A DNA stretch of 63,820 nt, counting the filler, from Platydemus manokwari (lineage: Eukaryota), in assembly GCA_037951405.1 (NCBI GenBank). It is 4 parts of 4 records of this genome, joined end to end, with 100 filler letters (N's around TTAATTAATTAA, not from the genome) between each part and the next. Parts side by side here need not be neighbours in the genome. Positions count along the whole stretch, not along the records: positions 40,028 to 63,820 come from JBBMOY010666651.1; 3 more parts are not named here. The stretch is one strand, 5' to 3'. The translations under genes and the position numbers were made by a program. Under the pieces are notes generated by a model. The model worked only from the letters and a program-made list of their open reading frames with translations. It was not told the DNA's origin and did not search any database. Shown one piece after another: positions 1,441 through 59,490 of the stretch (the first letter of the stretch is position 1; each line of letters begins with the position of its first letter).

Positions 1441-1966
1441 TGTTGGGTAGATCTCAAATCAATCAAAAGGTTCACAAGAACCAAGGAAAGAATCCTAAAA
1501 AAGGTCAATACACACAGACCCGATAAACACACATGTCACCAGCCTATCAGATTCGTTCTAATATTATCTATTTTTACCTACCTACAAATTTTTACATACC
1601 TACAAATGGCAGCAGTCTCAAATATTCACCAATGGCACGAGAGATGCGAGGAAAATTTGAAGTAGATCGATCTACGAACAAATTCAGCAAATGGAAAACG
1701 AAAATTCGTGACATTAGGCGGACATACCCGAAAAGTCTATAAAAGAGGTAGAGTTCCATGAATAACTGCCAGTCTTTTAGGTCGGTAACTCGTGTGTTAA
1801 GCTTATATTTAGTAATCAGTCTTTTTGATTACTTTCCATTCTGTTTTTGACTTTCGAGCGTTTATCTCATATTGAGTGATTTACTATGTTAATGTTAAAA
1901 GATTATTATGGTAGTATTTTGGTTAATACATTTTCACATCTAAATTGTTGATTAATATACCCAACA
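1441..1966. mobile_element. Solo LTR (526 bp)
   Basis: Perfect 9-bp terminal inverted repeat TGTTGGGTA...TACCCAACA, flanked by a 4-bp target-site duplication ATGA (1437-1440 and 1967-1970). Confidence 0.8.
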
Positions 1967-4855: not shown

Positions 4856-7800
4856 TTACGAGGTATACAATTCATTTATGATGGCCGAATATTTGTCTGT
4901 AATCACATTTCGTTTCATCTTCATCGTTGGTCCTAAACAGATCAAGCACAAAATTAAGAACCAATCAAATCTTGAACGGAATATCTTTTACCGAGTTCTC
5001 CACCACCGAGAGAAAAATCTGTCGGAAGGAAAGCCCATTTCTGAACATAAGCTGCTCTTGACACCGATGTTTTGTTCACTTGATTAATGGTGCTGTCGAT
5101 ATGCTTTTTGAGAATCGGGTCGACTTTATCGTATATTTGATGAGCATGTGATGCATCAATACCAAGTTCGTTGAGACTTCTTACAGCAGCTGGTGTTAAA
5201 ACGTCTGTTGGGATTTGAGTATCAAGGTTCATAGTAGTCTGCAATTCATTAAGAATTGATCTCATTAAGCAAACAATCAAAATATACTTTTAAACACAAT
5301 AAACACGATATAAATTTTTGTTTATCACCAACCAACATGACATTACTGACAAATGCAAGTTTTTCTTTAATTTTTTCTTCAATTGGAACAGGGGCAACAT
5401 TTTCTCCTCCGGCTGTTATTAAAAGTTCTGAACGATATCGATAATAAATAAAGTGGTTTCATTTCAGAGTTGTCTGAATTCAAACCTTTAATTCGACCGG
5501 TAATCACGAGGAATTCACCATCCTCCATTTTTCCTAGATCACCAGAATGGAGCCATCCCTCGGAATCAAGTGTTTCTCTGGTTTTTTCTTCAGCATTAAA
5601 GTATCCCAGAAACACATTTCGACCACGCATGCAAATTTCTCCAATATTATTTTCATCGGGATCTGCTATCTTCAGTTCTGTACCTTTCATTAATGTGCCA
5701 GCAGAACCCAATCTCAGCTAAAATTTATAATGGTTTTAGACATTCATTTGTATGGAATATTTTACAATTAGTGTTGTTATAATATACAAATATTTATTGA
5801 TAAAACACAGTTTTTATAATACAAGTCAGACAGTCTCCGACACCATCACCACATAGTGGCAGGGCAAAATATAACATAAAAAAATAACATCAAATAATTT
5901 GCTTTTAATTAGCTACGCTCACCCAACACGGTTGCTGACAAATCACTTGCTACATGCCAGCAACGATTCTGATACTGTCTATTAATTTAAGACAAGATCC
6001 ATTGATCCATTAAAATTTTCATTTCAATCTGGAAAGATGTAAGATTTCTATTCTCGATTCAATAGTTTTCTGAATCAACACACGATCGATGAATGGAAAA
6101 TTATAAATTCAACCATTAATACTGCTCTCGAAAATATTAAATTTAATATCATTTTCATATGATCATTGAAAATCTATCGAAGAAGCATAAATTTCTAAAC
6201 AGTGATAATATTTCATACATCAATGACAATCGATAGAAAAAAATAAATGTTTTGATTGAGAAAAATTTTGACTGAAAACAATGAATAGAGAAAAGAATTA
6301 CAACAACCGTTTGTGTGTTTAGTGCCAATGTCAACTAAGTACGATCGTGAAAGCCAAAATCAATCTAATTGTATTGAATATGCGATGAGAAATAATAATC
6401 AATATGATTCTGGTTTGAGAAATAAACTAATAAATTGAATTGATAACATATTGTTGATGAGATTGCATTGAATTTTTATTGAAAACAATTAGTTACCATA
6501 ACGACAGTTATAAGTCATAATATTAATTATTATTAGTTAATATTTTATCTATAAAAAAAATTTCTGCTGACAATTACCTTATCGGGTACGCCTATAGTGT
6601 GCGGTCCAGTACATTCCGACATGCCATAGATCTGAGAAATTTGGATGTCCAAGCTAAGAAAATAATCCGATGTTTGTTTACTAAGTGGTGCTGCAGCTGA
6701 CGCTAGATATCGAACACGATCAAGACCCAAAGCTTGTTTCACTTTAGAAAATACCAAGCAATTGGCCAATTTATAAGACAAACCAAGCGGTTTCTTATTC
6801 AACTTGTCCATACTGCTTCTGTAACCAACACGTTTTGCCCACATCGCAATTTGTCGTTTTAACCAATTAGCTTTGGCTCCGATTTCCTGCATTTGTTCCT
6901 GGATTTTTTCAAACACTCGAGGAACACCGATAAATATTGTCGGTCTGACCTAAACGGAATGAGATATTTGTTATATTAATTAGATAATGTTCCCATTATG
7001 ATAGCTATATTCGAATGAGCCAATACCTGATAATAAAAATATCTATTCGGTTATAAATTCATAACTATTATGTTAATTGTTTAAAAATCGTTATATCTCT
7101 TTCTTAATCTCAGAAGAACTCTTTTAAGGATTGAAAACTAACAGCGTTATCTTAATAATTTACCTCAGCTACACAATCATCTCCACCTAAAATCAAGATC
7201 TTTTTAAAATTTTCAGATCGTCCCAGCTAGAGCTAGATTAGCTATAATTTCGATTAGCCAATCTATTATTGGTAAAAGGTATTAGCTATAAAATTTTATA
7301 TTTTTAGGTTATCATAAAACTCGGTCATTTTTCCACGATTATAAAGAGTATTTTTATTTTCGTCTTCAAATATAATCATTTGTGGCTTTATATTGATATT
7401 TATGACCTCATATACTAAAAAACCTTTGTCAAATGATAATGGAATAAACATCAATTCAAGTTTCAAACCATTGACCTACAAACTTTCTAAATTCAATACG
7501 ATGATATCCATCAATACGCGCATCACAATAACAACCTCTTAACCTTCAATGTCAATTATAATAGTTATTGAAATTTTAATTATCTGCTATCATAGGAGTA
7601 AGATAATAAATTTTGTAAATCGAACTTTTTTTTATAAAATTATCAAACCATAAATGAATGATTCGAGCTCAGTAATCCAGTTTAAGTATTCAGCAAACCA
7701 TTGATAAGCTGATAGTAAGAACAGTTATTCGGAAATCAATATTATTTCTCAATCCCGATACATTTACAAGATGGTTAGAGATTGAGAATGGTTAATATTT

Positions 7801-9256
7801 TAGGTTGCCATCACAAAACAATAACAATTGAACCAGATCATATCCATAATCAAATAATGATTATCATATTACCACCCCAAATGACATCATTATGATTATG
7901 TGACACACCATATCTTTATTGGGACTTCAATATTGACATATTTCAGTTATATCATACATGTTAATCCTTTATTTGTGTAATCATAAAGATTCACTCTAAA
8001 TTGTATGACATTTCATTATACTAAGTCAACAAACTGACAAATCATTCTCCTTCACAAAGAAAACAGTGATGACTGGTCCAATGATAATGACATATGTATT
8101 TCAATAAATCGATGATTTGTAATCGGTTATGAATTATTATTGAGATAATCTATGTCAGTGGATTTCAACCGTTTTACTGGAGAGGAAACCACGGCAACAT
8201 TTCTCTGGCTCGAGAAACCCCTGTGCAATAATGTAGCGAATTTAATTATGTTAAATTTAGTATATTGAAACAATAACTAATAATAATAATAATAATATTA
8301 ATAATAATAATGATAATAATAATAATAATGAAATAATAATAATAATAATAAAATAGATTTTCGAAATTGAATTTAATATGTTGTTTATTTCTTCGTTGTT
8401 CTAATTTAGAAATTTAAAAATTGCGGAATCCCTGGAGCGTATTGGGGGAACCCTAAGATTCCGCGGAATACTGGTTGAAAACCACTGATCTATTAAAACA
8501 ATTCTTACTTCTAACAAAGTTTTCCCCAAAGACCCTTTCAAAGCATCGGGTTGAGCAAAATAAACTGTAGAGCCAATTGCAACAGTTGAGATGATATCAA
8601 CTAAATTTGCAGCGACATGACTCAACGGTAGATATGATATCAAGGAATGTTGGAAAGACTTGATCCCGACATGTTCCATTGCCATTTTCGCTGTGAAAAT
8701 AGCCTATATGAAATATTCATCATTAAACACTCCACCAATCAATTTATAACGCACATTGTCATGGGATAATACCACACCTTTTGGTAACCCAGTAGTACCA
8801 CTAGTATAAATGAGTATGGCGCAATCATCAGGTTTAATATTCGCCAAACGTATTTCCATTTCTCCATGAGCATTATCAGATTCCATATTCATAAATTCCG
8901 ACCACTAATCAATACTCATTATCATTCACCTTTTTCCCAAAATTATTTACCGTCAAAATTGGAATGTTGCATTTATTCTTCACTTCATCAGTAACAGTTC
9001 CAGTATATTTCACTATGGCTTTCAACTGAGGAATGTCTGGCAAGATAGAGATAATTTTGGCGAGTTGTTCATCACTGTCAACGACAGCCATTTGACAATT
9101 ACAATCGTTTATGATGAATTTACAAATATCTGCATTATTCGTGGCGTATATTCCACAAGTAATTGCTCCAGCAAAAATCGCTCCAAGCTCACTAATAAAC
9201 CATGCAGGATGATTGAATCCAATCATACCGATAGAAGCTTTAACATCAAGACCCAA
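4856..9256 (-). CDS. ACSBG: Long-chain fatty acyl-CoA synthetase, bubblegum (ACSBG) family; 5' exons missing
   Basis: Exons 9256-8951, 8904-8755, 8703-8509, 6949-6578, 5717-5486, 5427-5288, 5238-4992, 4932-4856 (TAA), all GT-AG and in phase. Motifs [65 protein letters not shown] and [17 protein letters not shown] are typical of ACSBG. Confidence 0.93.
8156..8487. mobile_element. hAT-family (Buster/Charlie-like) non-autonomous element in an ACSBG intron
   Basis: TIRs CAGTGGATTTCAACC / GGTTGAAAACCACTG (14 of 15 match). Imperfect 8-bp TSD atcTAtgt / atcTAtta with the central TA typical of Buster. Internal (AAT)n tract. Confidence 0.75.
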
Positions 9257-9662
9257 CTGAAATAAATCATTGTGTTATTAGATTGGAATGAAGATGAAAT
9301 TCTGACCTCATTAAAACAAATAAAATAAAACCAATAGAATTATGTGATAAGAAACACGTTAAAATTATTTTACTTAATGAATATAATCGTTGGAAAAATA
9401 TAAACTATAAACTTATGGCACAGAGGACAGAGAATTTTATCAAATGGGCAAGTATGTCTCTAATTTAATTATCGAGTTCATATAGAAACTAAATACCACT
9501 AAGGTAATAGACGTTCAGGGAATATTTAACGAATCGCATATTAGTAAGATTAAATCACAGGTTTCTAATCAATAAATTATTCTCACCTCGACTTCACAAG
9601 TGGGATAGAGCAATCGAAGTAAAGAAATATCAAAATCATAAGACTCATTTTTGTTGGAGGGT

Positions 9663-10820
9663 TGTTGGGTATAATACAATATATGCATATAAGTGAAAAT
9701 ATAAAAAAATACAAAATGCATTCATTAAAATGTGATAATATGCAGTTCACATATACTGCCCACATATCCCATCATACACATGAAATTTTCATAATTTTTA
9801 CCTAAATCACATCACCATGGTGAATTAATGCGTTACCAGGGCAACGTCATTGAGGGTATTAGGTCACCATGATAAATATTAAACATTAAAAGAATTGTCA
9901 TGATAACGGCAAAAAAATTATAATTAACTCCCACACACGCCCACGGAGTAAAGTTATATATATATATACGAAGCCGAATAATGGGAACGACCCACAAAAC
10001 CCCTAACAAATTGTAACAAACTAGCAATTTGCTTCAACCCATTAGCCAACAGAAATTATTAGTTAACTCAGAATTAGGAATTGGTTCTCCGAAATCGCGC
10101 TTATTCAGCTATTACCGATATTCTCCTCAGAAAGACATTGGAAATTGATATAAGAAGTTGGGCAGAAGAAGTGGAACCATTCTCGACCGTGATTCAATTT
10201 GGAAAACAGAAATCATCATCGATACTGCTCGGAACTATCTTCGAAAGGTTCAGGAGGAACATTATCGAATTATCAACGATATATGATGCACGCGGTAAAT
10301 TTACTTATTGTTCATTAGTACTAGAGTATAAAGTCGCAAGAATTTGTACTCGGTGCCCACACATAAATTTAATCGTATTCTCATTAACACTGAGAAATAA
10401 AGGCGAAAGCACTTGTATTACATTGTCGATATTCTGCAAAGCCGCAAGAATTTGTAGTAATTAAAATCAAAGTAATAAGATCAAATCTTCTTTAGTTTTT
10501 CGTCCGAAGTAAGGCGGCACTTAGTTCTTTAAGTCAGTTTGTTTCAAAACTCTTCAGGGCATAACACTTCCTTATGTTAATTATGTCGCATCAGACATTT
10601 GTTAATTTTTATTATAATAAACGAATTCATATAATGGTTTCATTATTCTATTATCTTATCATTATTGATTAAAGTCGGATTATTGGTGGAATCATCATTA
10701 TTCTGATTATAATCATCATTTCAAGTATACACAGGTAATTCGCCGAGTATGTACTAGCTGAATTACCTCATATAAGTAATCACCAAATACTACTTAGTAC
10801 AGGATAGTCGGACTCCATCA
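9663..10820 (+). mobile_element. Solo LTR (1158 bp)
   Basis: TG...CA ends (TGTTGG/CCATCA) with a 4-bp TSD GGGT (9659-9662 and 10821-10824). Shares blocks with the LTRs at 1-388, 22205-23158 and 34386-35284. Confidence 0.78.
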
Positions 10821-25128: not shown

Positions 25129-25348
25129 TGTTAAGTGGTCAAAATAAAATAAATAAATAAATAAACTACCTTTTGTAGAAAAATTAGTTCTACTTTGGCT
25201 ATCCACATGACTCATCAGTATCCCGGTTCAGAGATATATAAAACGATCTCTCGGAACCTTTAAGAACGATAGGTGCGACGATGACGATGGTGATTTTATG
25301 ATACGGATAGTATCCTATTTTGGCCTTCCATGGACATCATCAGAAACT
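25129..25348 (-). ncRNA. Repeat copy 1 with two tandem degenerate hammerhead-ribozyme motifs
   Basis: Minus strand CTGATGA-TGTCC-atgga-AGGCC-AAAA-TAGgataCTA-TC (core 25343-25337) and CTGATGA-GTCAT-gtgga-TAGCC-AAAG-TAGaaCTA (core 25218-25212). Homologous to 53709-53935. Confidence 0.6.
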
Positions 25349-40027: not shown

Positions 40028-41440
40028 TTTAGATTTTCCATTAGAATAAAACTTGGGTTCATTCGAAAATCGCTTATCTGAGTGTCTCCTGGGACTGGGG
40101 GCATTATTAAGCCCGTCATCTCTCTGGGCATACTCGTTTTTAAGATCTTGGTATGAGTCTAGCATAAAGTTCAGTAAGTCCAAAAGCATAGCAGCGTTTA
40201 ATTTTAATTTATTAAAATTACGAAATCCGAGTGGCTTTTGGCAATTCGAAGTTTCACGTGGAAGACTTGATGCAAACAAGCTATGTTACAGACATGGTCC
40301 TTGAAACAATAAAATTATATCAATATATTACGTATAGATCTGATTCATTTTTTGAAACCTATTAAACTTATTTTGTCTGTATTCGAAAATGATATTTTGG
40401 AAACACCTGCATGGCCTCTTGCAACCACTGGTTTAATACTTTCTTAAAACTATTGTATATTTTCAAATTTGAAAATGAAAAGTTAATATAACCATTTATG
40501 TGCAAATTGATAGCTTAATACCAAAAATTATATCACAATAGTCATAAAATTATATAAAAATTATTTCCAAAACAGAAAATCAAAAAGATAAATAAATACA
40601 TAACATTGCTGAAATCAGAAAGATAAATCCCAAACATAGAACTAAACACTAATATTGAAAAAGAACATTTGATATTAATTATAGTTAGATGTCTGTAAAA
40701 CGAGTATTATTACAGTACAGAAATATTGATCACAGTTTACACAACATACATTTTATCACACACAGTTTATTAGTTATAATAGATTGTGTTTATCAAAAAA
40801 TCATTTGGCTTGCTTTTAAAATTTGTATGAAAACATAAATAAATGACAGGGAAATATCAGAAATACAAATAGAAATTCAACATTTATATTTACATATAAA
40901 CATCAGTTTATATTTACAAAATCGTTTCATGATTAATTTGGCGTTTATCTTGACCACAAGTATTTCCAGCACAGGATTGAATACGAATTCAACCAATTAT
41001 AGGAAATGCTAAAAATAACTATTAATACTATTTCAACTATGATTGTTATATTTATTTTAATTATATATTCAGACAAATGCCTCGTTCTTGTAATCAGATT
41101 TCATGGGTAGCTCGAGACTCATCATTATTTATTTTTACTTTTTTAATATTCATAATACTTACCATTATAAAGGGAAGATTTTCTTCTTTCATTTCAATTC
41201 GACAAGTCAAGAGAATCTAAATTCGATATATTAATTTAATATAAAAATATTTGAAATTATATGATGCTCAAAATCTCAGGAAATCATTCTCAACAGAAAG
41301 TCTGAAGACCGTCGTGATTTGAAGTATCATCAATTCATAATACATTAAATATACATATATTGTATTCAAAACTTACATTTGTTTACTGTCATTTTGTGTT
41401 TGTACATCACTACTTGATTTAAATTATTATCATAGGCACC
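40028..41440 (-). CDS. Exons of an unidentified multi-exon gene (frame ambiguous)
   Basis: Several GT-AG bounded open segments, e.g. 41377-41438 GAYDNNLNQVVMYKHKMTVNK, and segments in 40028-40445; no recognisable domain. Confidence 0.3.
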
Positions 41441-42688
41441 TAAAGGTAGAAATATTAAATTTAACAATTTTATATTCAATACAATATATTATTATAATAT
41501 AAAATATTTTCAGTAATAAATTTTCAACATCATTATCTGACCCGAAAGATGAACATCATTTTATAATACTTATCATATTAAAATAATTGTTTCACAAAAA
41601 TTACCTTAGATTAAATTTATGTGCAATATATTTTATCACATATATAAACAATTTTTAAATTTTTTAAATAATAATTCTGGTAATTATTCAGTTTATTTCT
41701 TGCTACGAAGCGTTTTTGCATATTATTATCGATGCTGAAAAATCAAGTAATCCATTAAGTAGTTTCAGACCAAATAGAAAATTTAGTATTAAGTGCTTTC
41801 TGCAAGATTAGTTTATATAATATTTTTTCTGTATGTTTTATTGTTTGTATTTTTTTTTATTTTCGAATAGTCCTTTAATGGAGTGTCACTCTATTCTTTC
41901 CTTGTCTTTTGTATTTATATCAATACACGTCGTTATTTTAAAATTGTGTGTTTTTACTATTTTTATGATTGTATCATTTTTCAAACCAAACAAAAAAGTA
42001 ATTTTCCAAAAATGCTACGTATAATAATTAATAATGTAGAAGATTTTCGCCCAGGATATATAATTTATCACAAATGAACATAACATTTTTCTATAAACAT
42101 GGATAAAATGGCATTAAAATATTTATTTATGCAACGATTAATTTTACGTCATTGTTAAAAAAATAAATTGTCAATAGAATATGAATTGAACATTTAATTA
42201 TTGAATAACAACCTTTATTTGAAAATTAGAATAATTATGTCTATAATTTGATTTGTAAAATAACACAGAAAATAAGTTTTTATTCATTCAAAAAATAATA
42301 TTAATCAAAATGAATCACTGATAACAAGAATTTTAGCGCTCTAAAAGATCGAGAAAATAAGAACAGAATATTTACAACTAAGTTAGCTCTGAAAATGCGA
42401 TTATTTGATAAATTAAAGTTTGACCCAAAATGAAAGTAAAAAATACTTCAGGTTTGTTACCGATGGATCCATAAACGAGTCGTTCACCTATCATACTAAA
42501 ATTATAAATCGTTGTGCAAAATGAATTTTGTCATGGTTTATCTTGATATTTAATTTGTGAAGGTTTCGGTAAATGAAGTTTTAATAAAAATATATTGCAT
42601 GTTGTTCCTGATTAAAAATATAGCAATTATTCTTAGGAACAAATCAGCACTACATTGTACTTATGATAATCATCAAAGTTGTTGATTT

Positions 42689-44148: not shown

Positions 44149-45029
44149 AACAAACAAAAGAGACGTTGTAAACACATATTAAAATAAATGTTTCAAAAAA
44201 ATTACCTTAGATTAAATTTATGTGTAATATATTTTATCACATATATAAATAATTTTTTTTTAATTCTATATATTTAATAATAATATTGATAATTTTTTTT
44301 ATCAATTTTAGAATTATGTTTTATAATAGAATTTACGAGTTAAAGCATTAATACAGAAATTTCGTTAAACTAGAATTTTTCAGGCAGGTTATTACTGTAG
44401 CAATTTTTATAAGTAACAATATGCTAGAAATTTATCGAAAACTTTGATAATTGATTTTTAAAAATTTCACATTTTAATCACATAAAAACAAGTTACACTG
44501 TTTATCTCGTTCTAAAATTGTCAAGAAAATATAAAATATATAATAGCAACAAATAACCAAGGTGTTATTTTAGTAAGAAAATTGATCGAATCACAATCCA
44601 CGAGTGTTTATCACAGTATGGTATGCACATAAAAGATAAAAGAATGATAGAAATGACGCTCATAAAAGATTTTCACCAGAATGATTACACAAAAGAATAA
44701 GAAAAATATGAAAGAACATGAAAGACTCTCTTCTGTTCAAGAGTTCTAATTATTATTATAAACTTGTCATATCTGCTTACCATTGTCGATTTTGATTGGC
44801 AATTTGACTATTAAAGGCCTTTTACACATAGTATAAGAAGATCGAATCATACAGCCGAGCAAATAAGTATCAAGGGAATAACCACCATAATTATAGGTTG
44901 TTTTGAATTTTTTCACAATTCAGCTGGTTTTTATTTATTCAATTTGACAAAGTATGATTTTAAGGTCAGCAACAGTAAATTGTTTAGTAGGTGATGCGTA
45001 AAAATCCAAATTTCTGGCAATAAATTGAA

Positions 45030-46105: not shown

Positions 46106-46843
46106 TTCATTTAACGCCTTCAATTCAGGATTGGTTTCCTTTAGTGAAGTAGCTAGCCTACTTTTATCTAGTATCTAAGTCTGCTTCAATGTTGTAATCA
46201 TAATTATAAAACTTACTTTGTGGATATTTGTGGAATTGCTCACATTTTTCCTGGTGTTGCTTATTTTAACAATATTGGATTCTTTTAAACTTGCAATGAA
46301 TTTTTCTTCATTTTCTGGCAATTCATAACTAATCAATAAAGAATTATCTCGAATTGTTACTCCTAAATTTATTATTCGATACAGTAAAATTGCCAAACCT
46401 AAAATCAAACTAATAATAATTGCATTAATTCGAAATTTGTGTAGAAATTCAAAATCTTTCAACATTCTTGCTAAAATTAAATTGTGTCTAGTTTTTAGAT
46501 CACTTCTTGATTCTATAAGTGGATTTTCATACCAAACAATAAATTCTATTATTCCAAATCCCAATCCAAAACTCAAAAAAATCACGAACAGTAAAATTAA
46601 AGCCATTTGAAATTTCAAGAGTTTTTGAAATACGTTTGTCAAAACAGTTATTATGGATAAAATAATGAATATTGAACCGCACCATATTCCACAATAATGA
46701 AACCACGGAATCGGTACTGTTTTATTAGTTACTGGTTCTCTTAAAACACATCCACCTACTCCAATTGCAACGCAGAACAATCCCAGACAAAACAAAATCC
46801 AATTTAGAAACGTATCAATATAATATAAATCTTTCAAACTCAT
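46106..46843 (-). CDS. Four-transmembrane protein, MS4A/CD20-like; further 3' exons likely
   Basis: Exon 46843-46217 has four hydrophobic segments and GIWCGSIFII in TM2, resembling the MS4A WGG..FII motif; 42-nt GTAAGT..TAG intron; exon 46174-46106 in frame. Confidence 0.6.
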
Positions 46844-47230
46844 TTTCGAATCAATAATATTTAAAATAGTTTATTAATAATTGCTTATATGTGTATTTAT
46901 TTTTATTTTTAAAACCAATGCTGATAATCAAGGGCAGTACAGATTTTATAATTGAAAACCATTAGAAAAGTATGCATGAAGTGGGTTAATTACAACCCGG
47001 AGAAATGGATTGTAGGATCGAGAAATCGATAGGATCTTGGTTTAGGCACATTTCTTGAAAGACGTTATTATTTGTTGGGCTTTATGATTTGTTAATTAAA
47101 GTTGGTCTTTTATTATAGAATATTCGTCTATAATGAATTTTCGATAGTATATATTTAAATATGAATAACTAGATTATTTATTATATACAATATTATATTC
47201 AAACTAAAATATGCATAATTGGATAGTTGA

Positions 47231-47462
47231 GCCCTTGATTATGAAAGTGGTATAAGTCATTTCAACTTTTCAAAAGCAAATTTCCATTTAAAAATGGTAA
47301 TAAATTTCACAATCATATTAAATGCTGATTTACCGGCGCTAATTAATTGTCAAAATATTTCATTCCATAATACACAGATATTTTTTAATGCTTTAACATA
47401 CAAACCCCTTAATATCTCCAAACAAGAAATATATGACTTATACCACTTTCATAATCAAGGGC
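47231..47462. mobile_element. MITE with 30-bp perfect TIRs
   Basis: GCCCTTGATTATGAAAGTGGTATAAGTCAT ... ATGACTTATACCACTTTCATAATCAAGGGC; a second copy lies at 24255-24369. Confidence 0.85.
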
Positions 47463-50400
47463 ACAAGTGTCGATTTTTAATGCTGATTATTGATTAATAA
47501 AAATTTATAATTTTCTATAAGCGAATAAAATTATGTTGAGATTTACAATTGGTTTTTTAAAGATTTGTTAATTATTTTACGAAAAATTATTGGAGTAGAT
47601 TGTTTAATGAAGAATCATTGCAGCAATTGAATCACAACATAACAATTCTTTTATGCAATAATAAATCACTGGCAATTACAGTAAAATAATTACAGTATTT
47701 AGTATTTCTTTCTGGCTTTTATTGATTTTTTCAAAACCCAACATTGTATAACATTCTAACTTGTCGTCTATCTAACATAATCTTCTCTAAACATTCTTTT
47801 AGATTAAAGTCAGGTGTCATTAGTGCCAACGTACCAGGATTAGTTTGCAATGTAACTTATAAGGTACATCATGGCCGATTTTTTATAATCTTTGTGTATT
47901 TTATATGTATTGTCTTTACAGTTGAATTTATCATGTTCGTATTTATAAATTTATATTTTTCGGTGGAAATTATCAGCAAAATATTTATTTTTTTTAATAA
48001 CAAATTATTTTTTAACAGGATATCACTAGTAATCTATTATTGCTGATCTTTCATCTGCTAACCGGGCGTTGGTAATCCACTTCATCAATTTCCCCCTAAT
48101 AATCAGTTGAGAAATTTATCAGCCAGTTTTTTGAAAAGTTTTCAATTGTGGTTATGTTTGTAAGTGCTGTAATTAAAAAATCCTTTAAAAACTTCATCCA
48201 GTGCTTCATCTTCAATCTAATCTAAAAACCTCCTTCAAACAATTCACGTAAAACCTGTGCCACATTACAATATTCTGATTCAGTTATTTTATCGTATAGT
48301 TTTACTTGAAATGCTTTGTGAATCTAATTATTTCACAGTAAGCTGCTTCGATTGAAGCATTCATGTTAATGTATTGGAATTAATATAATCATTTTCTTTT
48401 TTATTCAATTTCCATTTGCGAAATATTCGACAAATACCGATAAGACAAACATCTCGAAACCTTATGAATTGTTCTGTTCACCGTAAAGGTAAGCGTTCGA
48501 ACTAGTAGCCAACAATGTAGATGACCTAATTTATTATCATGGAATGAGTAATTTCAGAAGTTAAAAAATTGAAATTAAATGCATATAAATATCATGAATA
48601 TATCTTCTTGCTTTCTGGACTCTTTAGACAAAATCATTTTGTAAGAATAATTTAAATAACAATTCAGAAAATAAATTTATTGACGTCTTATTATTGATTT
48701 GTTATTGGCTTATTGTTATATTATATTTATCCTAATAAATTCGAATTATTCTACTTTATTAAAATTTTCGACTCTTCAAAGTCAGAATTTGTTGTATCTC
48801 GATTTACTGATGTGAGAATCTCATTGGATTAGTATGCACAAATTAAAGCGATATATTACGGAATATTGTTATCAGCATTTGTCCGGATTTACAGTGAAAA
48901 GTGTTTATCAATATTTAATCATTGGATGGAAAGTTATTTTATTTTTTTTTCCAACAAAAATAAGAGAAAAAATCCAAATATTAAAAAAAAATTGAAATCA
49001 TCTTTCCTAATTGGAAATCGACTGATCATAGAAATACAGTTAAACGTCCTAGACTCGGTGTAATGTTCTTAATTGAAATGGTTTAATGGAGATAGTCATG
49101 ATTCGAATGACGGAGTTGTATTACTAAAGATCAAAGATAAGTCTTTTTCATTTGAAATTAAATTTGAGTGTCGATTATTAAAGATGAATAATATTAGCCA
49201 ATATAAATTAAATTCGTTTTTAATTAAATAATGGTTTTTTGAATTCTTTTAAGTAATTTTTAAATATTGAAATTAATCATTGAAAATTTAAACATTTCCC
49301 CAGTATCTCTCAATTTTATTATGTTTCTTCTGAATTAGTTAGTGGTTCACTAAAATTATTTACATAGGCGACCAGTGAGATATATTTTCTGTATTATTTA
49401 ATTTATAAAATGAAGACAGCAATACATAAAGCAGTGATTGAAATTTTGAAAATTTTTATTGAAAAATTTGTTTTTATTTTCAAAGTTCTAAATTTTTGTG
49501 AGAGACCTGATTTCATTGGTGTCAAATAAATTTTTTATGATTATTTTAAATAGAAAATATATTTATATTAAAAATATCAAGTGTGCATGTATTTTAACGT
49601 AGATTGTTTAGGATAATGGGATCCACAGAATGATGGAGTCTTGAGTCTAATAGGGTTAGATAGTAAGAGTTCGAATTAGCTGGCTTCACTTCTTGTTTCT
49701 ACTTCTATTATAGAATCATATAAATTATATAGGTCTCATATAGCGAAGAAGGATAGGGCTCCAATAAACAGCCCCGCCATAATGTAACAGAAAAAATGAC
49801 AGCTTGAACATACATAAAATGGATACCAATATAGGTATTTCTATTATTATTGTTATTGTCTATTGTTTATAAGGTGTATCGTGTTTTCCACCTTCTTATT
49901 CATATTTATGGTGTGGTACAGCGCATCTATCTTGATTGCTGAGATCATCTTATCATGGGAAAAACCTTGTATAAATCGATTATAGGATATAGAATAAATA
50001 TTACCTTGCGTTTTCGTTTTAGATCAGAAAAAATATCGCCATGGAGATGAGTTTTTATTGTTAAATAATTATATTCTGTTTTTTAGATTTTAGCCTGGTA
50101 ATTGATGAAATACGGGGGTGATTGCGGAACGAGAATATTAGACTAAAGAAAAGCACACAGCGAAAATATTCATGCCTGTGAAAACCGACTACGACTTAAA
50201 AAATTTGGACTATAAAACCAAAGTTTTCAAACTTTTTTTAAACCAAAACTATGAAAGACTTTGATTTTCAAACGAGAAATTTTTATGTTTTGTAATAAAA
50301 TCTTTTCACCTCAAAATGTTTGAACATTTTGATTTAATTTGCTTTTGTGGTTTGAAGTTATTGAATTGTTTTCAATTTGAGTATAACAAAATAGCAGCAG

Positions 50401-51003: not shown

Positions 51004-51623
51004 ATGAAGAGCTTCAATTTTTCAATTGATGACATTCTGAATAAAAATGAGCCAACTGTGGTCTGCAATGATGGAGAAAATCGAATGAACAACGATGAAA
51101 AAGATGCTGCACATCTATCCAAAGGTGATATTGTCACTATTATTATTAGAATTTTTGTTTTTAAATTATCAATAAAAAAACTGTCAGGTTAATAATCTGT
51201 TATCGTACAGATAAAGAAAAGGTGATCTCGTCCACAAGAAAGTCTAGATTTATTATTTTACACAAATACCAAAAGAAAACTCGCACAGTTTTCCTCAAAA
51301 ACCAAATTATGGAATTGGAAGCGGTGTTTCACGTTAAGAAATATTTATCCAGCAGTGAACGTTTATTGTTGTCGAAAAAATTGCAAATCAGTGAGCCACA
51401 GGTGAAGATTTGGTTTCAGAATCGTCGGAATAAATTCAAACGTGTTGTTTCACAAAAATGTAACTTTCTTGGTGCCAATGCCTTAGAAATTTTGACAGAG
51501 TATCCAACTACAATGGATGTTATGCAATTAAAATATTCGAATAATCCTTTGAAACGTCGCTTTTGGAGCTCTTTTAGTGCGGATGATCGCTGTTTATTAA
51601 GGAAGACAGTTTTTGAAAAATAA
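51004..51623 (+). CDS. HMX: NK5/HMX-class homeobox transcription factor, divergent
   Basis: Exon 51004-51124 with eh1 motif FSIDDIL; 86-nt intron; exon 51211-51623 with homeodomain [25 protein letters not shown]...[26 protein letters not shown] and NRRNK are characteristic of HMX. Confidence 0.82.
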
Positions 51624-51928: not shown

Positions 51929-52062
51929 TTAATAAATAAACTGAGAACATCTTAGAGATTAAATAAAAATCGAGTTAATTTCAAATTAAATAAATCTATA
52001 CACGATTAAATTCTTCATGGAGTTTTATTTAATCTCTAAGATGTTTTCAGTTTATTTATTAA
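51929..52062. repeat. Foldback or tiny MITE with 40-bp inverted repeats
   Basis: ttaataaataaactgagaacatcttagagattaaataaaa ... ttttatttaatctctaagatgttttcagtttatttattaa (1 mismatch). Confidence 0.85.
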
Positions 52063-53708
52063 GTATAATCTTGGTGATGTTTAAAGTTGCTCAAGTTTCT
52101 CATCTGATTCTTAGCTTACATGATTACCAATTACATTGAATAAGAGTCAGTTTGAACACACTGAAACTAAATAATATTCAAAGCTATAGATTGTGTGGAG
52201 TAGTGATTTCTCTTTAGTTCAATTTATTGTTCAATCTCCACTGTCGGTGTGGAAGCAAATTTTAATTTTCGAATTTTAAACGAATTATTTCGGTGTTTTG
52301 CAAATTTACTGCTTGTATTATTTTAACCTTAAGAAAATAGTTATAGTGAATCATAATTGTTGAATATATTAAATAACAACATAATCTCTACTAGTTTATG
52401 TCTTGAAATTATTTATAATATTTATAAATTCGTTAATGAAGAATGAAAATGTTTTATAAGTGGTAATTTATCAATACAACTTTATTCGATTTTTAAACCT
52501 TTGTTAAGAACAAAAGCTTTCGAAATTTAAATCCTGAGTTTCCCTTGCCTGACTTCCATTTAAATCAGGTTTCATTAATCATAACCCTTTAATCGGTTTT
52601 ATACATTTTATTCAATCTCAAACCCTAAATTGTAATCAATCATAAGTTAATAAGTAATGTACGATTAAGCTCTAAACAATATTAAATCACCAACGCATGA
52701 TTTACACATATTCATTACTGAAATACCCTGTAATTTGTAATTAAACTAATGCGTGTTATTAACAGCTTAGTGAACAACCAAAGGCTGATATAATACTACA
52801 TTCTTGTGTCTCTTCTGCCCGTATTTCAAATTATCAAAGTACACTATTTTGACATTACTTATATAGTAATTTTCAAATATGTTTTTCTTAGTATGTCTCT
52901 AATTATAGACTTTATTTCTTATTATACCTTCGAGTTCATAACTAAAAGATAAAATAATAAATAATAAAGAATTACAAAAAATTTACAATCATTAGAAAAA
53001 TTTTGAACTTTATAGACCCTTGGCATATAAACAAGCTTTTGTAAATTTGTATTTGTCTTGATGATTCATCATTTTGATTTGATCTTTGTTCAAGACAAAG
53101 GCAGGCCAGAAATTTCCAAAGACAAAGCAATTTCTCGCAGTAAGCAGAACGTCTTTATGTATGTCAATGAGAGGCTTTCTGCCAATGGAAAGACAAAGCT
53201 TCATCAACCGTCAAACAATCATAGGACAAAGACAGTTTCGTTTTCTAAGAAAAAAATCACACAAATCTGAGGTAAAATTTACTGAGCTTCATTTTATTTT
53301 TGGCATCATGAAGAAAATTTGAAGCCTCGTCGATCTATGCATTGCCAAATGTCAAACGCAAAATTGTGGAGGAAAAATAATATTTTGATTCTATTGTTGG
53401 GTACTAAATACTAAAATAAATAATAACAAAATCATATACATTTTTTCAAGAAAACCAGTCACTAAAGCCACCCAAAAATAGAAATTATATAAATAAAATT
53501 TATTAATATGAAAAATAGAAAAAATAATTAAAAATTACTAAAATTGGGACAAAAAAATCTGAGAACCTGAAAATAGAATAAATAAAATATAAAAATAATA
53601 AAAAGATAATTCATTAAAAAAGAATCACATTAAAAGAAAAGCAATTAGTCAGCAAAACACACACAACTACTCTAAACAAAAGTTTATAAAAAACGCTCAC
53701 ATTCATTA

Positions 53709-53935
53709 TGTTAAGTGGTCAAGATACAATAAAAAAAATAGATTAATAAACTACCTTTTGTTGAAAATTTAGTTCTATTTTGGCCCTCCATAGGCCTCAT
53801 CAGTATCCGGGTTCAAAGATATATAAGACGATCTCTCGGAACCTTCAAGAACGATAGCTACAATGATTATGATGGTGGTTTTATGATACAGATACAGTCC
53901 TATTCCGGCCTTCCGTGGACCTCATTCTCGGACCA
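53709..53935 (-). ncRNA. Repeat copy 2 with two tandem degenerate hammerhead-ribozyme motifs
   Basis: Minus strand CTGATGA-GGCCT-atgga-GGGCC-AAAA-TAGaaCTA (core 53803-53797) and agaATGA-GGTCC-acgga-AGGCC-GGAA-TAG (core 53928-53922); 125-nt spacing as in copy 1. Confidence 0.62.
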
Positions 53936-56639
53936 GAGACAGGTAGGACTAAAAGAAATCTAGAAAATAACTATCTGTTTATATAATAAATTAGTGATCA
54001 ATTCATCAAATAACCCAAAACCCAGGATAACTATATTGAGGCTAAAAATTCATGCAGAACCCGACGGCATTTTAAAGCGCTGGCAGGTAATAAATTTCGA
54101 CACATTATTGTCGTCAGGTTAAATCACGTCACAGAATGAAAATCCAATTCATAATAGATTACAGATTGAGCTACGTGTATGATGGATGATCATAGCTCAA
54201 TCTGATAGTTAATTAAAAAATAATTATTATATTATAATTAATTATAATTAATTATAACTAATATATAAAGTACATATTATCAACTAGTATAAATAGTTGA
54301 AAAAATATTATACAAAACACAAAAAAGGATTTCTATTTAAGTTTAAAAATTTATTATATAAAGTATGTTAATCATGTTTTATTTTACCTTATATTGTAAT
54401 GTTTTAAGGTGCCAAAGTGTGTACGTACTAGGCTACCCTGTATAAATCAATTCTATCTTTTAATTTATTTGTTTTAAACGAATAAACATTACTGTTTCAT
54501 TTTGTTTTAGCTATGTGTTTCTATATTAAATACTAGCTTATATAACAATTATAATCAAGAAGTTCTCTAATTATTTCAAGTAATTAATCTATTATTGATT
54601 ATTCCACGTAAGTAATCGAATGTTGTTAATATACGAGAAAAATCTTTAAACATTCATATAATCGTATCAATAAAGACAAGAGTATAAAAGCGATCGAATA
54701 AAATTACAAGTAGAGAAAGAGGAATTATTTTCGAAACAGTCATTCTAAAGTAAAGTTATTTTTTTGATTCTAACGGATTTATTTTACTATGTATTTTACA
54801 ATGATTATTTCACGAAACATTTTAATTAATAGTATCGTCCAATTACTCATCATCTAATCACCTAAAATCTAGTGCAAACTCAGATTCTCTTAAATTCGTA
54901 TCATAAATTAGAATTCAAGGACCTTGCAGCTCACCGCAAAAGCATCTATTAAAACTTGTATGTACAACAATTGTCTCTATTTAAAAAGCTAATAAAAGCC
55001 TGATTATTTGTAATTTAATATTTACTATTTTATTTGATATTTGTAAATTGATATTTAATAATTTATTGATTATTATTTCCACCTCGTTTAATTTAACAAT
55101 TATACACTTTCATTTATTTTCGTTATTTATTTATATTAAAATTATTATCACTGTTTCATTTATCGAGTCTTTGGAGCCCGGTGCAAAATAACTGTTGGGG
55201 TTTGAGAATAAGAACAACTACGTAAAAAGACAATGATCCGAAAATGATTGTGTATCGATTTATAAAAGTATTCTGAATGAAAAAATATTGAATATTTTAA
55301 TGTAAAATTGTATGAAATAATATTGAATATTTTTTGTAAAAATTCCAGAAGTTCTGCGATTGACATAAATTAAATACAATATAAATTTAAATCCAAAATA
55401 ATATTGTACTATCAGTTTAAAATATCTATTAAAACAATACAATTTAAAAACCACTTGAAAATTCTCTCAATAATAAAAATACCCATAAAATAATAATAAT
55501 AAATAACCCATTATGTGTTATCGCGCACAGTTAAAAAATATTCAGCCAGAATAAAATAAACAACCATGCATAAAATAAAATAAAATAACTATGAAATTAA
55601 TAGCAGAGAATTTCTCAGTTAACGAATGCACTAGTACAGTTACTCAGTTATAGCATAGCTATTTCACAGTAAGAAGTATTAACAATATTAACAGTATTAA
55701 CAACAAATCAGTATAACAATACAGTGGAGCAGAAAAAAATTCAATTGCATAGGATATACAGAAATTGTATATGTCCAGTACTCGCACTAGAAGAACATAA
55801 ATGCCATAGGAATATCAAGTAAGATTCAATTATAATAAAAATATTCATAATTTATAAAAACCGAGTATTCTTCTATAATACCTAGTTTTACTTCTCTTGG
55901 GAGTTTATTAACCGTTATTCTTTTCAGGAATTGTGTATAAAATGTCCTTCGTTTATGTGTATAAATGTGATTTCTCTAAAACCTTACTTTTATTAAGTGT
56001 ATATAAGTATTTGAAGAATTTTTATTATGCGTATTATGAATTTTCTGTTATAACAATGAAAGTATATCTAAACCACAAAGTTGTTGTAATATTAAATGTA
56101 ATATAAGTGCCATAAGGTTCCAAAATCATTTCGACTAATAATACCATCATCAAAATCATCTCATCACCTTTTTAGGCAAGATACAGTTAAGACAGTTAAA
56201 GTTAAAAATGATATAAAATCATTAAAGCAATATCTAGAACCGCTCATCCCGTCTCTATGCGTGTATTAGAGTTGATCAAGACAAAGGAACAAAGTAATTT
56301 TTGATTTTGTGGTTATCCGCAGGTCATTAGAGCTCCAGAGTACTGATAAGACATAGATATTGCTCAAGAATGTTAAAAACAACTATAAATAAAATAAATA
56401 TAAAACGGTGATCCAAAAAAATCAATATAACTCTTAATATTAATTTACTTTAACGAGCCAAATGCTTCTGAGCTATCTAGATATGATAATTAGAAATGAC
56501 AGAAATTAATAACAACATACAACTTAATGATGCTGATAACATCAATCTTAATGAAATGTTCCATTGACAATTCCAATACCAAGTATAAATCCAAATGTAA
56601 AAATAAATATCAGTCCCTATCTCCATGAATTTATTGCCG

Positions 56640-57602: not shown

Positions 57603-59490
57603 ATGAATATTGATTCAAATATAATCATTCTTTTTACAATATCATTCATTGTTCTTGTCAAATCAGATGAAGATTATTACAAACTATTAGGAGTTTCAAG
57701 AAGTGCTGATAAAAAAACAATTAAGCAAGCATACAAAAAATTAGCAATCAAGTATCATCCAGACAAGAATAAAGAAAAGGGTGCAGAAGATAAATTTATA
57801 AAGGTGACAAGGGGTAAGATTTTTGTCAGACGGTAAATTTTTGTAATTTAATAACAACAGTGAATTATTTTTTTGTGAAATAGTTTAAATTTGGCAATGT
57901 TTTTCGTAGATACCAGCATATTTCTGTTTGATACGTGTTCATAACTTGGTTTTCGTTAATAATTTCAGTAAATAATTTCAGCTTATGAAATCTTATCCGA
58001 TCCTGATAAACGACAACGGTACGATAAATTCGGTGAAGCAGCATTCAGCCAAGATGCTGGCAATGATGATTTCCATCATTTCAATATGAATGATTTCTTC
58101 AAGGATTTCGACTTTTTCCAGACCCATCATTCGTCAGAAGATTTCAAATCGCACGGATCGGGCGGATTCAAGGGGAAATTTTTCCAGAATCTTTTTGATG
58201 AAGACGATGACGACGATGGGTTCGGTGGGCATTTTGGATCGTTTAGTAGCATGTTTGGTCATAACGACGATCAGGATGGCAGCGATCTGCATTCTTATCA
58301 TACCGAGCAAACGTTTTCCAGTGGTAAGTGCCAGCTGGTTAAATTATTTTCAAATTTGCTTCCCGGTTGCTATAGTAACTGATAAATTATCAAAATTCAA
58401 ACATTTAACATTCGAGTCCAATTTAATGCTCGAATGCCAAATGTTAAAATCATTTGAAGTGATTTCTCTGCGAATGACGTCATCGCTGTTATCAAATGAT
58501 TATTATTACCTTGATTCTTACCAATGATAACAATTATATTTTTAACTAATTTAACGATTTTTGAATTGTTATATAGTGTTTGAGAATATCTTGACGGTCA
58601 TTCAAAAATTTTTCAGAATTCGAATTAAAAAAGCGTTAAAAACAATTATTTAATATTTTTTAAATTGTTTATTTTTAATGTTAATTATTATTAACTACTG
58701 ATTATAATAAGTAGGTTATATGATTTTAAAAATGTTTTCAATCTATTTCAAATCTTATTGGAATGGTATTAGATAGTGATTATAATAACCAAGTGATGCA
58801 AATTATTGTTTATGCTGATTAGTCATGAAAATTTGTAATCGATTTTTTATTTTATTTAGTAGTAGTTATTTAAGGGTATCATTTAATATTTAATTACACG
58901 ATTATATTGTGTGTTTTAGTGATTTGCACAGCTATTTTAAAGATATTATGCAATTTAATGCTGGTTGAATTTAATTTGTCGATTGCCTAATGGAAATATT
59001 TATCAATTTAACACATTCAGTTGCTATGATCAATAATATCCCATATTCATTGGATTAATCTTAACTTTTATACCTCAATCAATACAATTGTCTGCAGTTT
59101 TGTCCATGATTGATTATTCCAGATGATGAAATAAATATCAAATAACTGATCATCTAGATTATCATTTAATGAATGAAACTAATATTTACAAAATCATTTC
59201 TGTGTGGTTCTGGAAATCATATCAGTTTATGAGTTGTGCTATTTCATATTTCTGTATTCATAAAATAGTGTATCTGATCAGATGATAATTGTGTATTTAT
59301 CATTATAGATTATTTGTTCAGAAAATTAACAATAGCTACTAAATGATTTGTTTCTCATATCTGAATTAATGATTCCAATCGATTTTTCAACAATGGTGTT
59401 AATAATCAATAATTTTTTGTAGGTCAGCGATGCAGAACTATCACCAAAAGAAGCGGAAATTCTGTTTTTACCCAAACTGAATGCCATTAA
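57603..59490 (+). CDS. DNAJB9: DnaJ homolog subfamily B member 9 (ERdj4), ER-lumenal co-chaperone
   Basis: Exons 57603-57813, 57982-58323, 59423-59490. Signal peptide, J domain with HPD, G/F/D-rich region, and C-terminal [18 protein letters not shown] matching the DNAJB9 CRTVTQRRGN..T.T.C tail. Confidence 0.88.

What the first reader, a model, noticed from the sequence alone, without database searches (positions are those of the whole stretch)
53709..54547. Tandem hammerhead-ribozyme cores beside an LTR-like terminus: a possible animal LTR-type retrozyme
Seen: a ~220-bp repeat occurs twice (25129-25348 and 53709-53935). On the minus strand each copy has two motifs exactly 125 nt apart. Their four-way reconstruction is CTGATGA-GGCCT-ATGGA-AGGCC-(G/A)AAA-TAG-loop-CTA. 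Both copies stop sharply at the same ...gaccacTTAACA end. Copy 2 can be read as TGTTA(53709)...TAACA(54547) with ATTA on both sides. Established: CUGANGA, stem II, GAAA and a very short stem III define the minimal type I hammerheads of Penelope pseudo-LTRs and metazoan non-LTR retrozymes. Hammerheads inside TG..CA LTRs with 4-bp TSDs are the plant retrozyme arrangement, mobilised by Ty3/Gypsy. Inference: this family could self-cleave twice to release a ~125-nt RNA that may circularise, and may be an LTR-borne ribozyme system in an animal. Three of four motifs read CC-AAA rather than CC-GAAA and none has a fully intact core. That fits CpG decay, so these copies are probably dead. The right boundary is weak: the TSD is AT-rich and a Tc1-like end lies near 54440.
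Basis: partly seen in the sequence, partly recalled or inferred. Interest (0 to 1): 0.8.

Follow-up and report, generated by a model that had tools for sequence, protein, structure and literature searches.

The report
Dead type III hammerhead repeat copy
This is a decayed copy of a high-copy 839-bp mobile repeat in an animal genome whose other copies carry complete self-cleaving hammerhead ribozymes of the "type III" layout, which is typical of plant retrozymes and unusual in animal repeats.

Summary
On the minus strand of 53709-53960 lie two diverged ~125-nt tandem units, each with a hammerhead-like core. Both fold as type III hammerheads: a 7-bp stem III closes the motif, stem I is a 6-bp hairpin and stem II is GGCC/GGCC. 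They are not minimal type I motifs.

In the window 29 of 32 pair cells are standard pairs, against 31-45% in slid controls. Both window units are dead. Unit A lacks five bases including C3-G5, reads C at 16.1 and G at A13. Unit B reads A at G12 and has two stem mismatches.

Contigs of the only public run holding this DNA show a high-copy family (1842 pieces at 80% likeness or more). Other copies read CUGAUGA and GAAA intact. All six majority letters that fall on hammerhead positions fit the canonical core or pairing.

Depth steps up near 53709 and falls 26-fold at 54548. This supports a discrete 839-bp element, TGTTA...TAACA, flanked by ATTA/ATTA, that is solo-LTR-like. No second LTR, PBS, reverse-transcriptase ORF or RNA data could be found, so "animal LTR retrozyme" stays possible (about 0.3-0.4) but unproven. 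A Penelope pseudo-LTR is not supported.

The parts
53709..54547 (-). Whole 839-bp repeat element. The strand given is the sense of the ribozymes. Ends are TGTTA...TAACA, GC is 29%, and no ORF exceeds 42 aa.
   Evidence: Summed contig depth rises from 68 to 337 to 2400 across 53709 and falls from 1259 to 48 at 54547/54548. Contigs bridge 53745-53984, 53790-54101 and 53865-54226. Sequence; ORFs.
53705..53708 (.). Left copy of the putative 4-bp target-site duplication, ATTA.
   Evidence: One contig joins 53665 to 54567 with 22 letters between that contain a single CATTATAA. It looks like a paralogous site without the element (table 5c).
54548..54551 (.). Right copy of the putative 4-bp target-site duplication, ATTA.
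   Evidence: The flank is AT-rich, so the match is weak on its own. TA or TTA duplications with shifted element ends fit equally well.
53897..53949 (-). Unit A hammerhead relic, type III order. The stem III 5' strand is GUCCUAC, followed by C17. Stem I is truncated, the core is truncated and stem II is GGUC/GGCC. GGAA stands where GAAA should be, followed by the stem III 3' strand AUAGGAC.
   Evidence: The window lacks 5 bases: GC of the stem I 3' strand and C3-U4-G5. Contigs insert CAG and GC at 53925/53926, and 34 contigs show a loose-end consensus with intact CUGAUGA..GAAA. At 53943 (position 16.1) and 53905 (A13) most contigs read U and A where the window reads C and G.
53772..53829 (-). 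Unit B hammerhead relic, type III order. The stem III 5' strand is GUCUUAU, followed by A17. Stem I is UAUC.../...GAUA, the core is CUGAUGA and stem II is GGCC/GGCC. AAAA stands where GAAA should be (A at G12, 53781), followed by the stem III 3' strand AUAGAAC.
   Evidence: Rfam Hammerhead_3 scores 21 bits with E 0.044, against a gathering score of 48.5. At 53774, 53826, 53816 and 53809 most contigs read the letters that make C-G pairs at 16.5/15.5, 16.4/15.4 and 1.6/2.6.
53941..53942 (-). Predicted cleavage site of unit A, 3' of C17 at 53942.
   Evidence: Inferred from hammerhead numbering on alignment A2. Not tested.
53821..53822 (-). Predicted cleavage site of unit B, 3' of A17 at 53822. 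The RNA between the two sites would be 120 nt here and about 125 nt in copies without the deletion.
   Evidence: Inferred.
53709..53771 (-). 63-nt 3' tail of the element after unit B, ending ...GACCACUUAACA.
   Evidence: Depth steps at this end.
54162..54204 (.). Hairpin inside the element body: 12-bp perfect arms with 19 nt between. Its role is unknown.
   Evidence: Self-match; sequence.

Best explanation
53709-54547 is one decayed insertion of a high-copy, non-coding mobile repeat of an animal genome. The 3' quarter of its minus strand carries a short tandem array of ~125-nt units. There are two units here and one in some other copies. Each unit encodes a complete type III hammerhead ribozyme.

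The layout is a 7-bp stem III that closes the motif, a cleavage triplet AU-C (unit A lineage) or AU-A (unit B), a 6-bp stem I hairpin with a 6-nt loop, CUGAUGA, a 4-5-bp stem II, and GAAA.

In intact family members, an RNA read from this strand would cut itself after position 17 of each unit (inferred). That would trim the transcript and, where two units are present, release a ~125-nt RNA with 5'-OH and 2',3'-cyclic phosphate ends. A cellular RNA ligase could circularise such an RNA, as in retrozymes.

The window copy cannot do this. Unit A has lost C3-G5 and reads C at 16.1 and G at A13. Unit B reads A at the general-base position G12.

The carrier is a discrete 839-bp element with TGTTA...TAACA ends and a 4-bp ATTA duplication. 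It is most simply read as a solo LTR or another short terminal-repeat-type retroelement remnant. I hold that sub-claim at about 0.4.
For: Shown:
1. The only Rfam match in the region is the type III model, on unit B. Type I models match nothing.
2. With the type III structure laid on the two window units, 90.6% of cells pair, against 31-45% for slid partners. All three helices are present in both units.
3. The family is real and abundant: 1842 contig pieces at 80% likeness or more.
4. Other copies are intact where this one is broken. A loose-end consensus of 34 contigs reads CUGAUGA-GGCC..GGCC-GAAA. Insertions of CAG and GC fill the window's 5-nt gap. One variant of unit B reads GCCGAAAUAG.
5. 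Ten majority differences are listed for 53741-53943. Six fall on hammerhead positions (16.1, A13, 15.5, 16.4, 1.6, 2.6), and all six fit the canonical core or a Watson-Crick pair.
6. Stem I differs between lineages while keeping its pairing. It reads UGUCUC/GAGGCA and UGUCUC/GAGGUA in the unit A type, against UAUCUC/GGGAUA in unit B.
7. Joints that skip 117-119 nt show copies with a single unit.
8. Element limits come from the depth steps, TG..CA ends and ATTA flanks, plus one contig resembling an unoccupied paralogous site.
9. The host is an animal. An HMX-type homeodomain exon lies 2 kb away on the same gap-free piece.
Against: - The window copy scores only 21 bits against a gathering score of 48.5. 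Neither unit has a complete core.
- Unit B's minimum-energy fold does not close stem III.
- The 120-nt inter-site RNA of this copy shows no unusual stability (z = +1.6).
- No RNA run exists for this organism, so there is no evidence of transcription, cleavage or circles.
- Intact copies were seen only through the read tool's summaries, not as full sequences. No intact copy could be scored with Infernal.
- For the majority state at G12 of unit B I have one variant contig only.
- For the LTR reading, there is no partner LTR, no PBS or PPT, and no gag/pol within 24 kb. The 4-bp duplication is AT-rich, and TA or TTA fit equally well.
Confidence: 0.8

Rival explanations
1. The tandem hammerhead units form a small satellite-like or retrozyme-like module of about 125 nt. 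It sits at the end of, or was captured by, a non-LTR carrier such as a SINE-like retroposon (as in Schistosoma Sm-alpha) or a MITE-like element. The TG..CA ends and the ATTA duplication would then be coincidental.
For: - The unit number varies between copies, from one to two (joints skipping 117-119 nt).
- Contig counts dip about three-fold across 54302-54424, so the 839 bp may be composite.
- No LTR partner or PBS was found.
Against: - No tRNA-like head was found.
- Neither end has an A-rich or simple-repeat tail, and there are no terminal inverted repeats beyond 5 nt.
- Contigs bridge the ribozyme part and the body in other copies.
- Both ends coincide with depth steps and TG..CA.
Confidence: 0.35
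2. One reading: minimal type I hammerheads with a very short stem III, as in Penelope-like pseudo-LTRs or metazoan non-LTR retrozymes.
For: - CUGAUGA, stem II and (G/A)AAA are present.
- A TAG..CUA complementarity follows them.
- The units are in tandem, and the host is an animal, where type I is the rule (PMC7229834).
Against: - The TAG/CUA stem would enclose a 2-nt loop and puts A at 16.1.
- No stem I can be formed from the flanks.
- Rfam matches only the type III model.
- A 7-bp stem III and a 6-bp stem I hairpin are present in both units and are supported by the majority letters of other copies.
- No RT or GIY-YIG ORF appears among the ORFs of the 24-kb piece.
Confidence: 0.05
3. Chance resemblance: an AT-rich repeat that happens to contain CUGAUGA and a GC hairpin, with no ribozyme ancestry.
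For: The window copy is below Rfam threshold (21 bits) and has no intact core. Unit B's fold z-score is only -0.9.
Against: - The chance expectation of even the relaxed core is 0.06 per piece.
- Two units share the full three-helix layout.
- Other copies carry the complete core, and their differences fit the canonical pairs.
Confidence: 0.03

Closest known systems
Plant LTR retrozymes (Cervera, Urbina and de la Pena 2016, PMC4918200)
   Same: - Type III hammerhead with stable helices.
- Non-coding, non-autonomous, multi-copy element.
- TG..CA-type ends and a 4-bp target duplication.
- In plants, many hammerheads sit in solo LTRs.
   Different: - The host is an animal.
- GC is 29%, against more than 55% in plants.
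- The putative LTR is 839 bp, against 300-400 bp.
- Two ribozymes lie 125 nt apart inside one repeat, rather than one per LTR separated by 600-1000 nt.
- No partner LTR, tRNA-Met PBS or PPT was found at this locus.
Metazoan non-LTR retrozymes and hammerhead satellites (newt satellite 2, Schistosoma Sm-alpha, coral, mussel and axolotl repeats; PMC7229834)
   Same: - Animal host and low GC.
- Short tandem units, each with a hammerhead.
- The predicted product is a small RNA that could circularise.
   Different: - Those carry type I hammerheads. This one has type III topology.
- Their units are 150-450 nt, in arrays from dimers to large multimers, without TG..CA ends. Here there are one or two 125-nt units embedded near one end of a discrete 839-bp element.
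Penelope-like element pseudo-LTR hammerheads (cited in PMC7229834, PMC7761336; 10.64898/2026.07.22.740005)
   Same: The hammerhead sits in a terminal repeat-like part of an animal retroelement.
   Different: - PLE motifs are minimal type I with a 1-2-bp helix III and act as dimers.
- Here helix III has 7 bp and the ends lie in helix III.
- No PLE ORF is nearby.
Type III hammerheads reported in animals: the discontinuous Clec2 3'UTR hammerhead and HDV-like circular RNAs of toads and termites (PMC6155905, PMC7936874). Type III elements in insects are mentioned only as 'in preparation' (PMC7761336).
   Same: Type III topology in an animal context.
   Different: The first is a single conserved mRNA motif and the second are RNA replicons. 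Neither is a high-copy genomic repeat. The insect elements were not described in any paper I could read.

Membership tests
Hammerhead ribozyme, type III (Rfam RF00008) | Core CUGANGA between stems I and II | tested here: met
   Unit B has CUGAUGA at 53803-53797. Unit A has lost C3-G5 in the window, but 34 contigs read the full heptamer there.
Hammerhead ribozyme, type III (Rfam RF00008) | GAAA after stem II (G12, A13, A14, A15.1), with the A15.1-U16.1 pair and H17 | tested here: not met
   In the window, unit B reads AAAA (A at G12) and unit A reads GGAA with C at 16.1. Other copies read GAAA and U16.1: 53905 and 53943 majority letters, the loose-end consensus and a unit B variant. The family meets this feature; this locus does not.
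Hammerhead ribozyme, type III (Rfam RF00008) | Three helices in type III order, with the ends in stem III and stems I and II capped by loops | tested here: met
   29 of 32 cells pair in the two window units, against 31-45% for slid controls. Stem III has 7 bp, stem I 6 bp and stem II 4 bp.
Hammerhead ribozyme, type III (Rfam RF00008) | Score at or above the curated gathering threshold | tested here: not met
   21 bits against 48.5 for unit B, and no hit for unit A. Intact copies could not be scored because only summaries of them were available.
Hammerhead ribozyme, type III (Rfam RF00008) | Self-cleavage at H17 | not testable with these tools
   Needs in vitro transcription of natural copies.
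LTR retrozyme (plant type) | Two direct LTRs, each with a hammerhead, flanking a short non-coding centre | tested here: not met
   No second copy of the 839-bp repeat lies in the 24-kb piece. The only internal direct repeat is the 125-nt tandem pair. A solo LTR would look like this, so the family-level question stays open.
LTR retrozyme (plant type) | PBS (tRNA-Met) and PPT at the inner LTR edges | tested here: not met
   The tRNA-Met PBS 12-mer has no match with up to 2 mismatches. No TGG follows either end.
LTR retrozyme (plant type) | TG..CA ends and a 4-bp target-site duplication | tested here: met
   TGTTA...TAACA with ATTA/ATTA. The ends coincide with depth steps, and one contig resembles an unoccupied site. 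The evidence is weak because the flank is AT-rich.
LTR retrozyme (plant type) | Expressed as circular RNA | not testable with these tools
   No RNA run holds this stretch.
Metazoan non-LTR retrozyme | Type I hammerhead in each tandem unit | tested here: not met
   The topology is type III.
Metazoan non-LTR retrozyme | Tandem repeats of about 150-450 bp without LTR features | tested here: inconclusive
   Two 125-nt units here and one in some copies. They lie embedded in a larger TG..CA element.
Penelope-like element pseudo-LTR | Minimal type I hammerhead with a 1-2-bp helix III, next to an RT/GIY-YIG ORF | tested here: not met
   Helix III has 7 bp. No ORF of 90 aa or more other than homeobox, DnaJ, a membrane protein and unassigned ORFs lies in the piece. 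Degenerate RT remnants were not searched with profiles.

The most novel reading that the evidence does not exclude
This family is an animal counterpart of plant LTR retrozymes. It would be a non-autonomous LTR-type retroelement whose LTRs carry canonical type III hammerheads, mobilised by an LTR retrotransposon and expressed as small circular RNAs. That would break the current division (type III with LTRs in plants, type I with tandem repeats or PLEs in animals). It would also bear on where plant retrozymes and viroid-like RNAs got their ribozymes.
Probability: 0.3. Interest if true: 0.8.

Novelty: new variant of a known kind. Interest (0 to 1): 0.6.

Why it matters
Current reviews divide genomic hammerhead elements in two. 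Type III motifs inside LTR retrozymes belong to plants. Type I motifs in tandem repeats and Penelope-like elements belong to animals (PMC7229834, PMC7761336, 10.64898/2026.07.22.740005).

An abundant animal repeat family with canonical type III hammerheads inside an LTR-like element does not fit that division. It offers a concrete system to ask three questions. Did LTR-borne ribozymes arise more than once? Do animal LTR retrotransposons mobilise ribozyme-bearing parasites? Do such elements feed the pool of small circular RNAs?

The locus in the window itself is a dead copy with no likely function.

Tried and rejected
- **Type I reading (reader):** rejected. It needs a 2-nt stem III loop, puts A at 16.1 and has no stem I. 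Rfam type I models give nothing, even at E up to 10 on 351 bases.
- **Penelope pseudo-LTR:** rejected on topology and on the absence of nearby ORFs.
- **Tc1-like end near 54440:** contig counts and depth run on across it. No inverted partner was found.
- **Other copies in the piece:** none by blastn with word size 7.
- **Pattern scans for the core plus stem III:** two patterns in JGI metagenomes, one in viral contigs and one in prokaryotic genomes gave only three unrelated or ambiguous hits, L002, L003 and L004. L003 has a sub-threshold type III-like motif (18.9 bits) of uncertain standing.
- **Fetching other copies through spurious ORF products:** a protein word search with the 52-aa open frame of 53964-54119 found nothing.
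- **Species identification:** the HMX exon has no hit above 60% identity; the best is an acanthocephalan. The 222-aa membrane ORF has one 54% homologue in an unnamed run. An exact look-up found nothing and the atlas search was uninformative. The host is an animal, but the lineage is unresolved.
- **RNA evidence:** no RNA run holds the stretch.
- **Fold of the 120-nt inter-site RNA:** not more stable than shuffles.
- **Other structured RNAs in the element:** no other Rfam family in 53950-54600 and no tRNA.
- **The 2010 survey cited for type III elements in insects:** not held in the library.
Full report
**What is in the sequence**

The piece 40028-63820 is gap-free, about 27% GC and eukaryotic. 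It carries an HMX-type homeodomain exon at 51222-51623 and a DnaJ exon at 57603-57836. The homeodomain finds only animal HMX proteins. The best is 60% identical, from an acanthocephalan. The host is therefore an animal of an unannotated, poorly sampled lineage, and the species stays unknown.

The finding lies about 2 kb downstream of the homeobox exon, antisense to both genes.

On the minus strand, 53960-53709 consists of two diverged units of about 125 nt.
- Unit B reads CUGAUGA-GGCC-loop-GGCC-AAAA.
- Unit A reads a truncated version of the same, ending GGCC-GGAA.
- A relaxed core descriptor finds only unit B in 24 kb, where first-order simulations give 0.06 hits.

**Topology**

At gathering or E up to 10 over the whole piece, Rfam reports no hammerhead. 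On the 351 bases around the finding, the only match is Hammerhead_3, the type III model. It lies on unit B at 53772-53829 on the minus strand, with 21 bits against a gathering score of 48.5.

The TAG after (G/A)AAA does not pair with a CTA two bases downstream. It is part of AUAGRAC, which pairs with GUCYUAY about 50 nt upstream.

I aligned both units and counted a type III structure on them:
- stem III of 7 bp closing the motif
- stem I as a 6-bp hairpin
- stem II of 4 bp

This gives 29 of 32 cells paired (90.6%). With the 3' partners slid by 1-3 columns, 31-45% pair.

**State of the window copy**

Unit A:
- It lacks five bases: GC of the stem I 3' strand and C3-U4-G5.
- It has C at 16.1.
- It has G at A13.

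Unit B:
- It has A at G12 (53781).
- It has a C/A mismatch at 16.5/15.5.
- It has a U/C mismatch at 1.6/2.6.

Both units are dead as ribozymes. Unit A's minimum-energy fold still closes stem III, while unit B's does not.

**The family**

One public run holds this DNA, kept as contigs. No RNA run does. I laid its contigs on 53400-54600 at 80% likeness, which placed 1842 pieces.

Limits of the repeat:
- Summed depth is 12-68 just left of the element, 337 in the bin containing 53709, and 2200-2700 over the ribozyme units.
- It is 1500-10500 over 53933-54301, inflated by AT-rich low complexity near 54220-54300.
- It is 490-1270 over 54302-54547 and 48 from 54548 on.
- Contigs bridge 53745-53984, 53790-54101 and 53865-54226, so the ribozyme part and the body travel together.
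- The repeat therefore spans 53709-54547.
- One contig joins 53665 to 54567 with 22 letters between that contain a single CATTATAA. It looks like a paralogous copy of the flanking sequence, itself a moderate repeat, without the insertion. This fits a 2-4-bp target duplication.

Ribozyme state in other copies:
- Thirty-four contigs diverge from the window just where unit A is deleted. Their consensus, as printed by the tool, reads an intact CUGAUGA, GGCC..GGCC and GAAA.
- Further contigs insert CAG and GC at 53925/53926, which fills the 5-nt gap.
- Ten majority differences are listed between 53741 and 53943, and six fall on hammerhead positions. These are 53943 (16.1, U in most copies), 53905 (A13, A in most), 53774 (15.5), 53826 (16.4), 53816 (1.6) and 53809 (2.6). 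All six agree with the canonical core or make a C-G pair.
- A variant of unit B reads GCCGAAAUAG.
- Stem I keeps its pairing through different letters. It reads UGUCUC/GAGGCA and UGUCUC/GAGGUA in the unit A type, against UAUCUC/GGGAUA in unit B.
- Joints that skip 117-119 nt show copies with one unit only.

The family does carry GAAA and paired stems, so the ribozyme reading stands, in type III form.

**What the carrier is**

The element has no ORF above 42 aa and no tRNA-like part. It has no other Rfam family, no terminal inverted repeat beyond 5 nt and no A-rich tail. It has no internal long direct repeats apart from the two units.

The 24-kb piece holds no second copy, no tRNA-Met PBS and no RT-like ORF.

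TG..CA ends with a short inverted pentamer and a 4-bp duplication are the signature of an LTR. Tandem sub-repeats of variable number are common in LTRs. A solo LTR is therefore the simplest reading, but it is an inference from the termini alone. The 4-bp match is in AT-rich sequence. The three-fold dip in contig counts over 54302-54424 leaves room for a composite element. I put the LTR reading at about 0.4 and a non-LTR carrier with a captured hammerhead module at about 0.35.

**How it would work (inferred)**

In intact copies, an RNA of minus-strand sense folds each ~57-nt motif and cleaves 3' of C17 or A17. The homologous positions here are 53942 and 53822. Two units would release about 125 nt (120 nt in this copy), with ends suitable for ligation into a circle. 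A single unit would simply cut the transcript.

If the repeat is an LTR, full-length members would carry ribozymes at both ends, as plant retrozymes do. No step of this could be tested, because no RNA data exist. The 120-nt RNA of this decayed copy is not unusually structured.

**Comparison with what is known**

Plant LTR retrozymes have type III hammerheads in 300-400-bp LTRs, 4-bp duplications, a tRNA-Met PBS and many solo LTRs (PMC4918200). Animal retrozymes and Penelope-like elements carry type I motifs, in tandem repeats or pseudo-LTRs (PMC7229834; 10.64898/2026.07.22.740005).

Type III motifs in animals are reported in three settings:
- the discontinuous Clec2 hammerhead (PMC6155905)
- HDV-like RNA replicons (PMC7936874)
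- insect elements mentioned only as 'in preparation' (PMC7761336)

The family seen here works like a retrozyme or hammerhead satellite. It shares the ribozyme type and the terminal features with the plant kind. It fails the locus-level membership tests (paired LTRs, PBS/PPT), which a solo LTR would fail anyway. I rate it a new variant of a known kind.

**Limits**

- Intact copies were seen only through the read tool's summaries.
- The species is unknown.

Noticed in passing
window 41060-41570, minus strand: A cluster of sub-threshold C/D-box snoRNA-like matches. These are SNORD35-like at 41267-41335 (26.9 bits, with an intact 'UCACGACGGUCUUCAGA' guide-like block), SNOR75-like at 41064-41149 and SNORD78/SNORD2-like at 41504-41569. 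It may be a snoRNA gene cluster.
   Followed up: no
window 51929-52062: A near-perfect hairpin with 43-nt arms, 95% complementary, and 48 nt between them. It also gives a sub-threshold MIR859 hit (33.5 bits against 130). It lies just downstream of the homeobox exon and may be a MITE or a hairpin RNA.
   Followed up: no
window 47217-47476: An inverted repeat with 44-nt arms, 89% complementary, and 172 nt between them. It looks MITE-like.
   Followed up: no
window 41574-41656 and 44175-44257: An 83-nt direct repeat, 95% identical, with copies 2601 bp apart.
   Followed up: no
window 46175-46843, minus strand: A 222-aa ORF predicted to be a multi-pass membrane protein. It has no Pfam family and only one homologue in 5.8 billion proteins (54% identity, an unnamed sequencing run). 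It appears lineage-restricted.
   Followed up: partly
window 53441-53563: The left flank of the element is itself moderately repeated in the genome (summed contig depth 375-1139 against 12-68 nearby). The hammerhead element seems to have inserted into an older repeat.
   Followed up: no
L003 1930-2021 (metagenome contig Ga0224511_10023618): A hammerhead-like motif (CUGAUGA-GGCC..GGCC-GAAAUAGGUU) with two alternative 7-nt partners for stem III. It scores 18.9 bits on Rfam Hammerhead_3. It is unclear whether it is a real type III ribozyme with a long stem I or chance.
   Followed up: partly
window 51222-51623 and 57603-57836, plus strand: An HMX/Nk5-type homeodomain exon and the J-domain exon of a secreted DnaJ-like protein flank the finding. 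The hammerhead element lies between them, antisense to both.
   Followed up: partly
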